DNA of 63,413 bases, filler included, from Reticulomyxa filosa (GCA_000512085.1; 15 parts of 15 records of this genome joined end to end with filler, not necessarily neighbours in it), one strand, 5' to 3'. Shown: positions 43,609-46,299, counted from the whole stretch's first letter. Notes: generated by a model not told the origin, from the sequence alone. A program made the numbers and translations.

Positions 43609-43718
43609 GGGGGGGGGNNNNNNNNNNNNNNNNNNNNNNNNNNNNNNNNNNNNNNNNNNNNTTAATTAATTAANNNNNNNNNNNNNNNNNNNNNNNNNNN
43701 NNNNNNNNNNNNNNNNNA

Positions 43719-43749
<31 letters not shown>

Positions 43750-43795
43750 TTTCAAAACTCAACTCTTGTTTTGCTGACAAATCAAAAATGTGCAA

Positions 43796-45122
43796 ACATC
43801 CACCATGCAACCTCAATAGTAAGAACAGTGTACTCTCTTTGCGAATGTTATAATCAGCAATTGTGCGACTGTTTTCGAGATTTCTCCCGGCGAATACAAG
43901 TCGAATGCGATCAGCGGGGAAACTATCACCATGTTCATATTCAATCCGCTCTTTCAATTCTTCTATCATCATTGAGGGCGCGACGTGAATAGTTAAAGTT
44001 CGACCGGTCAGTGTTTTGATAAATCTGATACAATCGGGATTGTTTAGTTCATACCAATTTTTTTTTTTTTAAAAAAAAATTTTAAAATATGTACGTATAC
44101 ACATATATGTATACGTATACGTATACATATAAATATAATGTGTACATACAATCCCATGCCTCCACCGCTCGATTTATATTGTTTCTGCAATTGTTTTCGT
44201 CGTTCTTGTGCATTTTTTTCTTCTTGAATTTTTTTTTTTTCATCCTCAATTTCCATCTCTTTCAAAACTCGCTCTTGTGAACCTTGGTGGAAGTACGTAT
44301 TCCAAAAATCGACCCTCGACTTTGCGTGCTTCCCAAAGGCGAACAGTCCGCAGGTCTCTTTGGCAGTTCCAAGAAATGGAATCAGGCACTGCTGTACTAA
44401 GTCGGCTGGCATTAGTCCAAACTCCGTACATGCATGAGTCACAGTCGCAAGCATTTTGTAATAGCTTTCCATTGTCATCTGCGGAAACGTATAATAGCAA
44501 GGCTTTGGTCCCTGTCCAATTTCATGGTTTTTTACACTCGCTTCGTGCAAAAACTCGGGCAAATTTCTCTCATATTGCAACTTCAATTCTTTATTTACTT
44601 CCGTTTCAAGACCATAGCCCCCTTTTATATTTGTTGCATATTGTCTGCTACCACTTTCTTCATTTTGTATTAATACTCACACACACACACACACGTACAC
44701 AAAAAGCCACCTGTGTGAAAGGTTTCGGAAATACACGTTTCAAAAAGCTTGTCAAAAGTTATTGCTGCACTCCATTGGTCTGACAATATTCTTAGGCACA
44801 ATTCACCCATTTTTTTTACATTCATCACATGTGGAATGTTCACAAATTTTGCTTTTGGCGCTGCAAATTGGTCCACAAACATTAGCTCCATTTCATACAC
44901 ACCCTTTTCATAAGGAGTCCCTTCGGGACCCTGGATCAACACTTTCCATTCTTTTGTCCAGTCTTTTGGATCACTTGGATAAAACTTTTGCACTAATGCA
45001 AGTTTTTGAGAGCTGCTTTCCCAAGCCTCGTATTTTTTTTGCAACCATTCCGGTGACATCTGAACTTCAATTTTACCGCAAAGGAGGAGGTTCTTTGCTA
45101 CGAACAGTTTGGAAGTTGTCAT
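43796..45122 (-). CDS. E2 ubiquitin-conjugating domain fused to a C-terminal ubiquitin-like domain; continues beyond contig
   Basis: WKVLIQGPEGTPYEKGVY..PKAKF..PHVMNV..GELCLRILSDQWS (Cys 44796-44798). After an intron comes EVNKELKLQYERNLPEF, a linker and SSGGG. Intron 44025-44149 then joins MGL-FIKTLTGRTLTIHV..IRLVFAGRNLE..YNIRKESTLFLLLRLHGG-C. Confidence 0.88.
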
Positions 45123-45435
45123 AACTTTTGACCAAAAAAACTGTGCTTTACACAAAAAAATATGGATTTTACGTTTTCAGCTCTTTCTCTTTACACCCAA
45201 TCGGTTTTCTAAGAGCTAAGAAAATAATTCTTATTTTTATTTGGAAAGTCTATGAAGAGTATTATCTGAAGTGAATAGACACTACTTGTACTGTATTTTT
45301 TTAATGAAAAGTATGATTATTTTTAATTTTGGTGAATATCAATACAAATCCAACTTAAATGGTAGTTGGTCTAAAGAAAACTTAGTTTTTTAAAAGTCAA
45401 AGTGTTTAAAACAGGGGCAAAATGAAAAAAATAGA

Positions 45436-46111
45436 ATGAACTCTCTCCATTGTAGAGCATCTTCTCCTAAAGTTAGCAAAAGTTTTCCAACAGTATTGAT
45501 TCATAAATATTTTTACCAACAAAAAAAGCCGGAATTTTCTCAACCCGTTTTATATGATACACATCCCAATCCAAATCCTTACGAATACTGGCAACGGTGG
45601 GCGCGTCGTAAAGGTATCCGCACACCAAACCTCGTTGGTGACCCTGAAAAAAATGATCTCAGAAAAGTTGACAAACTTTCACCCCATTATCAGTACCGAG
45701 AGCCAGAAAAGCCAATCGAACAAGCATACCGTTTGGTGACAGCAGGGACAGGAGTGAGCAGTCGGAAACGACTACGAGATGGTGTGAAGGAGAGTAAAAA
45801 AAAGGCAACAGCAGAACCAAAGTAATAGCTGACGATCTGACAACAGAAAAACACATTAAAAAGCAATTGGAGTTGTTGGTTCGGCAGTGTAAATCACTAG
45901 AAATAAGCGAGGTGGAATTGGCCGACATAATAAAAATATCCAGAAAATTCCAGAATCTTCTGGACCTTGCCGATTCATTGCAAGACCCCACGTGCGCCTT
46001 CTCAGCGTTCGACACGGTGTTTTTTACATATCACAAATACGGCATCATGGGAGTTAAGGCATTCAATCAAATGATCGGTCAATGTGAGCGTCGCGAGAAG
46101 TACCCTCAATG
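45436..46111 (+). CDS. 5' part of a probable mitochondrial PPR-like protein
   Basis: Basic/Ser-rich N-terminus; frame restored across the A8 run at ~45796-45803; VKAFNQMIGQCERR is PPR-like. Divergent from the E2-Ubl gene. Confidence 0.5.
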
Positions 46112-46299
46112 GTACGTGCATGTGTTTTAAACAAATGTAAACTAAGTGTAATAACAAATAAATATATACATATACATATATATATATATATANNNNNNNN
46201 NNNNNNNNNNNNNNNNNNNNNNNNNNNNNNNNNNNNTTAATTAATTAANNNNNNNNNNNNNNNNNNNNNNNNNNNNNNNNNNNNNNNNNNNNTTGTAAA

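What the first reader, a model, noticed from the sequence alone, without database searches (positions are those of the whole stretch)
43796..45122. E2-ubiquitin-like polyprotein with GG-flanked Ubl, possibly followed by a Hint domain
Seen: splicing joins an E2 with intact catalytic Cys (HPN motif altered to HVMN) through a ~100-aa linker to a divergent ubiquitin. The ubiquitin is preceded by SSGGG|M and ends LRLHGG|C (TGT, or T plus a GTTTG donor). Known: diglycine sites are DUB cleavage points, and Ubl-GG-Cys is the junction in ciliate ubiquitin-like/Hint (BUBL) autoprocessing polyproteins. Inference: one gene may encode both a conjugating enzyme and its own dedicated modifier, released by DUBs or activated through a Hint thioester that could bypass E1. 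The downstream part is lost at the contig edge, so the Hint domain is unproven.
Basis: partly seen in the sequence, partly recalled or inferred. Interest (0 to 1): 0.82.

Follow-up and report, generated by a model that had tools for sequence, protein, structure and literature searches.

The report
Foraminiferal E2 enzyme fused to ubiquitin
A three-exon gene of the foraminifer Reticulomyxa filosa really does join a ubiquitin-conjugating enzyme to a ubiquitin-like domain with an intact diglycine end, and relatives show the same layout, but nothing supports a Hint self-cleaving domain behind it.

Summary
On the minus strand, three exons encode an E2 (Pfam UQ_con, catalytic Cys kept, HPN read as VMN), a conserved 75-aa extension, an E/K-rich helix, and a ubiquitin-like domain (55% identical to ubiquitin) ending LRLHGG. 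The frame then runs 18 codons into a T-run at the contig edge.

The contig is Reticulomyxa filosa. The deposited model (ETO22201.1) reads through intron 2 and misses the Ubl.

The same layout occurs in an R. filosa paralog where the middle region and the Ubl share one exon. It also occurs in a Nonionella stella transcript, a soil contig and three contigs from two other assemblies. Both intron positions are shared with relatives, so the fusion is real.

- The GGG|M junction before the Ubl is not conserved, so the Ubl is not released on that side.
- The residue after GG is Cys, Glu or Asp, so it is not a conserved Hint nucleophile.
- The paralog stops 17 residues after GG, and 69 post-GG residues of the soil homolog match no Hint model.
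- A short motif after GG (L-x-x-F-D-L/I) is conserved instead.

Most likely this is an E2 that keeps its own processable Ubl tethered. The mechanism is inferred and the true 3' end is unknown.

The parts
44711..45059 (-). Exon 1: N-terminal two thirds of the E2 (UBC) core, from ATG 45059.
   Evidence: Pfam UQ_con 5e-18. Best solved relatives are Ubc13/UBE2N at 4.5e-14. The start matches the paralog's M-A-N-V-R-W-L-Q-K. Coordinates.
44622..44710 (-). Intron 1 (favoured model): 89 nt, GTGGCT...AAAG, phase 1 after F-H-T-G. It contains a (GT)n run.
   Evidence: Of the frame-keeping GT-AG pairs, this one gives F-H-T-G-G-Y-G. That matches the uninterrupted L003 sequence F-I-R-G-G-Y-S. The donor position and phase are the same in L001 and L002. 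There is no RNA evidence. The deposited model uses a 32-nt intron instead.
44515..44621 (-). Start of exon 2: the last helices (alpha3/alpha4) of the E2 fold, with the Y-x-x-N-x-x-x-F-x-x-x-A pattern.
   Evidence: In the Nonionella homolog, the Pfam UQ_con match runs through the equivalent stretch to profile position 132 of 140. hhalign places it on alpha3/alpha4 of a canonical E2, but weakly at probability 2.7%.
44290..44514 (-). Family-specific 75-aa extension, predicted helical, with no known domain.
   Evidence: It is conserved in all relatives, with 11 invariant columns in A2. No Pfam or NCBIfam hit. An exhaustive HMMER search found only five clusters. The AlphaFold2 model has low confidence.
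44158..44289 (-). E/K/Q-rich spacer of 44 residues, predicted as one long helix, ending SSGGG.
   Evidence: Sequence. The helix spans 104-140 in the model. It is poorly conserved among relatives.
44025..44149 (-). Intron 2: 125 nt, GTATGT...CAG, phase 2, in the codon before F-I-K-T. It is full of TA/TATAC and A/T runs.
   Evidence: Splicing restores the ubiquitin N-terminus. An intron at the same position and phase occurs in L002. It is absent from L001, where the frame is continuous. The deposited model reads through it.
43799..44157 (-). Ubiquitin-like domain, spanning M-G-L in exon 2 (44157-44150) plus exon 3 (44024-43799), interrupted by intron 2. It ends LRLHGG.
   Evidence: Pfam ubiquitin 4e-13. 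PDB ubiquitin about 1e-21. Identity to ubiquitin is 54.8%. K6, K27, K63, L8, R42, R72, L73 and GG are kept; K11R, K29R, K33E, K48R, I44V, H68F, V70L and R74H differ.
43745..43798 (-). Post-GG tail of 18 codons, beginning C-L-H-I-F-D-L-S-A-K-Q. It carries the conserved motif x-L-x-x-F-D-[LI]-x-[SA]-[QK]-[QE].
   Evidence: The same motif in the same register follows GG in L001 and L003.
43718..43744 (-). Run of 27 T at the contig edge. The frame is cut off here, so the true C-terminus is unknown.
   Evidence: The whole deposited contig is 2475 bp, which equals this piece.

Best explanation
This is a real three-exon gene of Reticulomyxa filosa. It belongs to a small family, seen so far in foraminifera and a few unassigned environmental or draft-genome contigs.

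Shown: the polypeptide runs through five parts.
1. A UBC/E2 core. The Cys is present and the Asn of HPN is kept, but His and Pro are lost family-wide.
2. A conserved 75-aa helical extension.
3. A charged spacer helix.
4. A ubiquitin-like domain with a ubiquitin-type LRL(R/H)GG end.
5. A short conserved motif after GG.

Also shown: the junction in front of the Ubl is not conserved, and nothing Hint-like follows GG in the relatives.

Inferred mechanism, about 0.35-0.4 on its own: the product is a ubiquitin-fusion type precursor. A deubiquitinase trims whatever follows GG. The Ubl is not cut from the E2 on its N-terminal side and stays tethered to it. E1 can then activate the exposed GG and pass it to an E2 cysteine, either the molecule's own or a sister's. 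The enzyme thus carries its own donor and becomes attached, together with that Ubl, to a target or to itself.
For: Domain calls: UQ_con 5e-18 and ubiquitin 4e-13; PDB matches.

One gene:
- Paralog L001 has E2 exon, intron, then one exon covering middle region, Ubl, GG and tail.
- The Nonionella stella transcript product P0003 carries UQ_con plus ubiquitin.
- L003 has the E2 C-terminal part, middle region and Ubl without introns.
- L002, L004 and L005 show the same exons.
- Intron 1 position and phase are shared by the window, L001 and L002. Intron 2 position and phase are shared by the window and L002.

Processable end:
- R72, L73, G75 and G76 are kept in the window, L001 and L003, although the domains are only 55-77% identical to ubiquitin.
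- The post-GG motif shares L, F, D and L/I in register in all three. By my estimate, three invariant positions among 13 in three unrelated tails have a chance of about 4e-5.

Coupling of Cys and GG: the three members whose end is visible and that keep Cys also keep GG plus tail. The Nonionella member has Ser at the catalytic position, ends LRLPAG and has no tail.
Against: - There is no RNA evidence for this gene; no sequencing run was listed.
- The 3' end is missing, so the size and nature of what follows GG in this gene are unknown.
- The Cys/GG co-variation rests on four sequences.
- L002 has Ser at the aligned catalytic position and its Ubl end is not on the contig.
- The loss of His and Pro from HPN, and D to R after the Cys in this copy, may mean reduced or altered catalysis.
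- Structure models were of low confidence, and the complex test gave no verdict.
- Conservation of LRLxGG could simply reflect recent descent from ubiquitin.
Confidence: 0.6

Rival explanations
1. The Ubl is a non-covalent, permanently attached regulatory or targeting module. It would dock on the E2, on its backside or active-site groove, or on ubiquitin receptors. It would tune charging or processivity, much as MUB proteins bind E2 backsides. In this reading GG is never exposed, and the post-GG motif is part of the fold or of a binding surface.
For: The Nonionella member lacks GG and the catalytic Cys yet keeps the whole architecture, so the layout has a function that needs neither. The hydrophobic patch positions L8, I44/V and V70/L are kept. 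MUB:E2 backside binding that blocks E2~Ub formation is a documented precedent (PMC4996978).
Against: Ubl domains used only for binding usually lose the flexible LRLRGG tail. Here it is kept in three divergent members. The complex test gave no verdict, which is neither for nor against.
Confidence: 0.28
2. The tail after GG is a lipid or hydrophobic membrane anchor, making this a membrane-tethered E2. The paralog ends C-F-F-I-stop, which has the form of a CaaX box, and the window has the aligned-looking Cys followed by Phe codons.
For: L001 has a Cys at exactly -4 from a genuine TAA, followed by two hydrophobic residues. The window reads T-C-F-F-F.... MUB proteins are prenylated Ubl proteins that work with E2s (PMC4996978).
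Against: L003 has Lys rather than Cys in that region and continues for 69 residues or more. The window has at least nine Phe codons after the Cys, which is not a CaaX box unless the T-run is an assembly artefact. The T-rich ends may be untranslated sequence read as Phe.
Confidence: 0.08
3. One reading: a BUBL-like Ubl-GG-Cys-Hint autoprocessing unit. A Hint domain beyond the contig edge would form a thioester at GG|C and activate the Ubl without E1.
For: Cys follows GG in this copy, and the frame is open to the contig edge. In L003 a longer coding region does follow GG.
Against: The +1 residue is Glu in L001 and Asp in L003. L001 stops after 17 residues. L003's 69 post-GG residues hit no Hint, Vint or intein model at E up to 1. 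The window's tail aligns without gaps to those non-Hint tails. There are no tandem Ubl-Hint repeats.
Confidence: 0.03
4. Artefact or decaying copy: a chimeric assembly, or a pseudogene in a repeat-rich draft genome, whose exons only appear to join.
For: The contig is 2.5 kb and ends in homopolymer and microsatellite sequence. R. filosa contigs are fragmentary. L001 shows a possible one-base frame problem at its intron 1 acceptor, and L003 has a one-base frameshift inside the Ubl.
Against: All three exons have open frames, canonical GT-AG borders and conserved residues. The layout and intron positions recur in independent loci and species.
Confidence: 0.03

Closest known systems
Canonical single-domain E2 enzymes of the Ubc13/UBE2N - UBE2D - UBE2E cluster
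   Same: UBC fold match, with the G-x-L-C-L active-site context, the Asn of the HPN triad, and the G-P-x-G-T-P-Y-E-x-G motif.
   Different: His and Pro of HPN are lost in the whole family. The PNPxxP stretch between alpha2 and alpha3 is replaced by G-G-Y-G. A 75-aa extension, a spacer helix and a Ubl are appended. Subfamily assignment is not secure: Ubc13 is the top hit, but by only 1-3 orders of magnitude.
Ubiquitin-fusion precursor genes (polyubiquitin, Ub-eL40, Ub-eS31)
   Same: A ubiquitin-type domain ending LRLxGG is followed in frame by further residues. In the classical genes these are removed by deubiquitinases (established knowledge).
   Different: In the classical genes ubiquitin is the N-terminal part and is released free. 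Here it is preceded by an E2 through a junction that is not a deubiquitinase site. The short sequence after GG is conserved rather than arbitrary.
[quoted passage not shown]
   Same: The modifier and the conjugating enzyme are encoded in one polypeptide.
   Different: The order is reversed, with the Ubl first. The system is bacterial and works in an operon with a peptidase-E1 fusion. No sequence relationship was tested or seen here. The atlas search listed a bacterial UQ_con+YukD cluster only at a weak score of 0.85.
MUB (membrane-anchored ubiquitin-fold) proteins with their E2 partners (PMC4996978)
   Same: A ubiquitin-fold protein is dedicated to an E2. The paralog's end C-F-F-I has CaaX form.
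   Different: MUBs are separate proteins without a GG end. Here GG is kept, the Ubl is 55-77% identical to ubiquitin itself, and the CaaX-like end is not conserved (L003).
Ciliate BUBL genes (ubiquitin-like domain followed by a bacterial-intein-like/Hint domain; from my own knowledge, paper not in the held library)
   Same: A Ubl is followed in frame by more protein, and Cys follows GG in this one copy.
   Different: There is no conserved nucleophile at +1, no Hint match in the relatives' downstream sequence, and no tandem units. An E2 lies upstream.

Membership tests
UBC/E2 superfamily (Pfam PF00179) | Profile match above the curated cut-off | tested here: met
   65.4 bits against a cut-off of 27, E 5e-18. 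The paralog scores 66.1 bits and the Nonionella homolog 66.7 bits.
UBC/E2 superfamily (Pfam PF00179) | Catalytic Cys in the G-x-[LIV]-C-L context | tested here: met
   G-E-L-C-L aligns to the Ubc13 active site. Cys is also present in L001, L003 and L004. Ser is present in P0003 and L002.
UBC/E2 superfamily (Pfam PF00179) | HPN triad upstream of the Cys | tested here: not met
   V-M-N aligns to H-P-N, so only Asn is kept. The family consensus is [YH]-x-x-N.
UBC/E2 superfamily (Pfam PF00179) | C-terminal helices alpha3/alpha4 completing the fold | tested here: inconclusive
   No Pfam match on exon 2 alone. The homolog P0003 matches to profile position 132/140. hhalign is weak. The model has low confidence.
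Ubc13/UBE2N subfamily | Clear orthology to Ubc13 over other E2 classes | tested here: inconclusive
   Ubc13 structures are the top hits (4.5e-14 and 8.6e-15), but UBE2D and UBE2E follow within 1-3 orders of magnitude. No tree was built.
Ubiquitin family (Pfam PF00240), conjugatable type | Ubiquitin-fold profile match | tested here: met
   49.3 bits against a cut-off of 25.4 on the part of exon 3 tested. PDB ubiquitin at about 1e-21.
Ubiquitin family (Pfam PF00240), conjugatable type | C-terminal L-R-L-x-G-G that can be exposed | tested here: met
   LRLHGG here, and LRLRGG in L001 and L003. Exposure and conjugation themselves cannot be tested in silico.
BUBL / Hint autoprocessing units | Conserved Cys/Ser/Thr nucleophile directly after the Ubl | tested here: not met
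   Cys in the window, Glu in L001, Asp in L003.
BUBL / Hint autoprocessing units | Hint/intein-like domain downstream of the Ubl | tested here: not met
   L001 has a stop after 17 residues. L003's 69 residues have no Pfam hit at E up to 1. For the window itself this is not testable, because the sequence ends at 43718.
MUB-type prenylated Ubl | C-terminal CaaX box | tested here: inconclusive
   L001 ends C-F-F-I-stop. The window is cut off in a T-run. L003 has no such Cys.
MUB-type prenylated Ubl | No diglycine conjugation end | tested here: not met
   GG is present in the window, L001 and L003.

The most novel reading that the evidence does not exclude
A self-loading, self-conjugating E2. After the conserved tail is trimmed, the tethered Ubl's GG is charged onto the enzyme's own cysteine. 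The whole E2-Ubl chain is then transferred to a target, so an E2 itself becomes the cargo of a ubiquitin-type modification. The joint presence of Cys with GG plus tail in three members, and their joint absence in Nonionella, would be the evolutionary trace of that coupling.
Probability: 0.25. Interest if true: 0.75.

Novelty: new variant of a known kind. Interest (0 to 1): 0.5.

Why it matters
E2 enzymes are normally free-standing and receive ubiquitin from E1. A comparative survey found that E1 and E2 families use few, exclusive accessory domains (PMC4327156).

A natural, conserved E2 carrying its own ubiquitin-type domain with an intact LRLxGG end is a ready-made test case. It could show how tethering donor and enzyme changes charging, chain building or targeting. 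It also adds a lineage-specific piece to the little-known ubiquitin system of Foraminifera.

On the practical side, both R. filosa database entries are mis-modelled. One lacks the Ubl and the other lacks the E2, so the architecture is invisible to annotation-based surveys.

Tried and rejected
RNA evidence
- No sequencing run was listed for the piece.

Homology searches
- The word-index search with exon 1 alone found nothing.
- The search with a profile that included the Ubl was swamped by polyubiquitins and added nothing.
- A profile without the Ubl added only short fragments and one ordinary E2.
- NCBIfam gave nothing useful.
- Two metagenome scans, with the middle-domain profile and with the L003 tail, were blank, as was one viral scan.
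- An exact look-up of the L003 downstream product, and of P0003 on contigs, found nothing.
- The atlas search with the L003 tail gave no usable hit. With P0003 it gave only plain UQ_con clusters.

Structure
- The AlphaFold2 models had mean pLDDT 59 for the middle region and 53 for E2 plus extension. This is too low for fold searches, which I therefore did not run.
- Complex prediction, with E2 plus extension against Ubl plus tail, gave no verdict at score 0.00. This is neither for nor against binding.

Ideas dropped
- A link between a Ubc13-like E2 and a K63-only Ubl. K63 is Ala in L003, K48 is lost only in this copy, and the Ubc13 assignment is weak.
- A shared GTTTTG donor inside the tail of the window and L001. 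The positions and phases differ, and the window's tail aligns in frame to L003 beyond that point.

Literature
- Searches found no description of this family. The BUBL paper and the 2008 E2-fold survey are not in the held library.

Joined model
Exons were searched by reference, and the deposited model P0001 stood in for E2 plus extension.
- A script only enumerated frame-keeping GT-AG pairs and printed junction peptides.

Full report
**What is there**

The piece (43718-46192) is the whole of a 2475-bp contig of Reticulomyxa filosa. An exhaustive protein search with exon 2 returned the deposited product of this very contig: ETO22201.1, 'ubiquitin-conjugating enzyme family protein', 327 aa.

The gene lies on the minus strand and has these parts:
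- **Exon 1 (45059-44711)** matches Pfam UQ_con at 5e-18. Its best solved relatives are Ubc13/UBE2N at 4.5e-14.
- In that ungapped alignment the active site G-E-L-C-L lies on G-R-I-C-L. The HPN triad lies over V-M-N, with a His one residue earlier.
- **Exon 2 (44621-44150)** ends ...S-S-G-G-G-M-G-L, with the Leu codon split.
- **Intron 2** is a 125-nt GTATGT...CAG intron (44149-44025).
- **Exon 3** continues F-I-K-T-L-T-G-R. This restores the ubiquitin N-terminus.
- The exon-3 product matches ubiquitin at about 1e-21 and is 54.8% identical to it.
- It ends L-R-L-H-G-G (GG at 43804-43799), followed by Cys (43798-43796). Another 17 codons follow, and then 27 T at the contig edge.

**Is the fusion real?**

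No RNA run was listed, so the evidence is comparative. It is strong.
- A paralog on R. filosa contig ASPP01008054.1 (L001; deposited only as 'ubiquitin', ETO26140.1) has an upstream E2 exon and an intron. A single exon then runs uninterrupted through the middle region, the Ubl, GG and a 17-residue tail to TAA.
- A transcript-derived protein of the foraminifer Nonionella stella (P0003, EukProt) carries UQ_con plus ubiquitin in one 334-aa product, with the same middle region.
- A 1-kb JGI contig (L003) has the E2 C-terminal part, middle region, Ubl, GG and tail without introns, apart from a one-base frameshift.
- Contigs from two further NCBI assemblies (L002, L004, L005) show the same exons.
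- Intron 1 sits in phase 1 after F-x-x-G in the window, L001 and L002.
- Intron 2 sits in phase 2, in the codon before [FY]-I-K-T, in the window and L002.

The deposited model of the window's gene reads through intron 2 and therefore lacks the Ubl. It also uses a 32-nt intron 1. I favour an 89-nt intron (44710-44622), because it yields F-H-T-G-G-Y-G, which matches F-I-R-G-G-Y-S in the uninterrupted L003. That choice is not verified by RNA.

**The 'linker'**

The roughly 100-aa linker is three different things.
- Its start (Y-E-R-N-L-P-E-F-L-H-E-A) fits the alpha3/alpha4 pattern of E2s. In P0003 the UQ_con match runs through it to profile position 132 of 140. hhalign agrees, but only weakly.
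- Next comes a 75-aa stretch conserved in every relative, with 11 invariant columns. It has no Pfam or NCBIfam match. It has only five clusters of relatives among 1.84 billion representative proteins.
- Then comes a poorly conserved E/K-rich stretch of 44 residues, predicted as one long helix.

**The two diglycines**

The SSGGG|M junction before the Ubl is peculiar to this copy. Relatives have other residues there, and two lack even the Met. Deubiquitinases cut after a ubiquitin fold, not before one (established knowledge). So the Ubl should stay attached to the E2, and this is not a polyprotein that releases a free modifier.

The C-terminal end is different.
- R72, L73, G75 and G76 are kept in the window, L001 and L003, although the domains have drifted to 55-77% identity with ubiquitin.
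- What follows GG is conserved in register: x-L-x-x-F-D-[LI]-x-[SA]-[QK]-[QE].
- By my estimate, three invariant positions among the first 13 would arise by chance in about 4 of 100,000 cases.
- The tail is therefore coding and constrained.

**Hint?**

The evidence is against it.
- The residue after GG is Cys here, Glu in L001 and Asp in L003.
- L001 stops 17 residues after GG.
- L003 continues for at least 69 residues to its contig end. These are helical-looking and match no Pfam family at E up to 1.
- There are no tandem units.

The window's own downstream sequence does not exist in the data, so a Hint domain cannot be formally excluded there. The family gives no support for one. I put it at about 3%.

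**Further family features**

- His and Pro of HPN are lost in all members, while Asn is kept.
- The catalytic position is Cys in the window, L001, L003 and L004 (G-S-P-C-G).
- It is Ser in Nonionella and in L002 (G-S-P-S-G).
- Nonionella also ends L-R-L-P-A-G, with no tail.
- So the three Cys members with a visible end have GG plus tail, and the one Ser member with a visible end has neither. This is suggestive, but it rests on four sequences.

**How it most likely works**

Shown: the architecture, its conservation, the intact ubiquitin-type end and the conserved motif after it.

Inferred (about 0.35-0.4): the product is a ubiquitin-fusion-type precursor whose post-GG part is trimmed. This leaves an E2 permanently tethered to a Ubl with a free GG. 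E1 can activate that GG and pass it to an E2 cysteine, in cis or in trans. The E2 would thus carry its own donor and become conjugated along with it.

Rivals:
- The main rival (about 0.28) is a non-covalent cis-acting Ubl, as in MUB:E2 pairs (PMC4996978).
- A CaaX-like end (C-F-F-I-stop) in L001 suggests a membrane anchor, but it is not conserved in L003.

The AlphaFold2 models were of low confidence. The complex test gave no verdict.

**Comparison and novelty**

The domains themselves are ordinary. The combination is not described in the papers I could search.
- A bacterial Ubl-E2 fusion (BubAB) is the nearest concept, but in the reverse order (10.1101/2024.11.21.623953).
- A eukaryote-wide survey notes that E2s use few accessory domains (PMC4327156).

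I rate it a new variant of a known kind, of moderate interest.

The joined spliced protein was not submitted to any search or fold tool. Exons were used by reference, and the deposited P0001 served for E2 plus extension.

Noticed in passing
window 44025-44149 and 44644-44677; L001 4511-5687: Both R. filosa database entries are mis-modelled. ETO22201.1 reads through intron 2, so it ends in intron-encoded residues and lacks the Ubl. It also uses an implausible 32-nt intron 1. ETO26140.1 ('ubiquitin') starts inside the gene and lacks the upstream E2 exon.
   Followed up: yes
window 45436-46130 (+ strand): A second, divergently oriented gene sits about 380 bp upstream of the E2 start. It shows two ORFs of 129 and 87 aa, possibly two exons. 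Neither has a Pfam match.
   Followed up: partly
L002 about 440-480 versus L004 1-40: Two closely related members from sister assemblies (GCA_024449935.1 and GCA_024449835.1, organism unknown to me) differ at the catalytic position. L002 has G-S-P-S-G, with a Cys four residues later, and L004 has G-S-P-C-G. So Cys/Ser switching occurs within the family.
   Followed up: partly
L003 825-1031: In the soil or environmental homolog the frame stays open for 69 codons after GG, in AT-rich sequence, up to the contig end. The region looks helical and has no detectable relatives. Its nature is unexplained.
   Followed up: partly
L001 4885-5000; L003 about 675-685: Two possible sequence errors. With the conserved phase-1 donor, the L001 acceptor that would give the family's G-G-Y-S-K reading is off by one base, next to a G-run and long A-runs. 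L003 needs a one-base shift inside the Ubl. These are homopolymer errors or real lesions; I did not resolve which.
   Followed up: no
window 43718-43744, 44070-44140, 44680-44700, 46160-46192: Low-complexity DNA marks both contig ends and both introns: an A/T run, TA and TATAC repeats, and a (GT)n run. L001 also ends in (TA)n 55 nt after its stop. Assembly breaks at such runs probably explain why the gene's 3' end is missing.
   Followed up: no
L001 2164-4448 (- strand): The paralog's upstream neighbours are two protein-kinase genes, one with a PH domain. No link to the E2-Ubl gene is evident.
   Followed up: no
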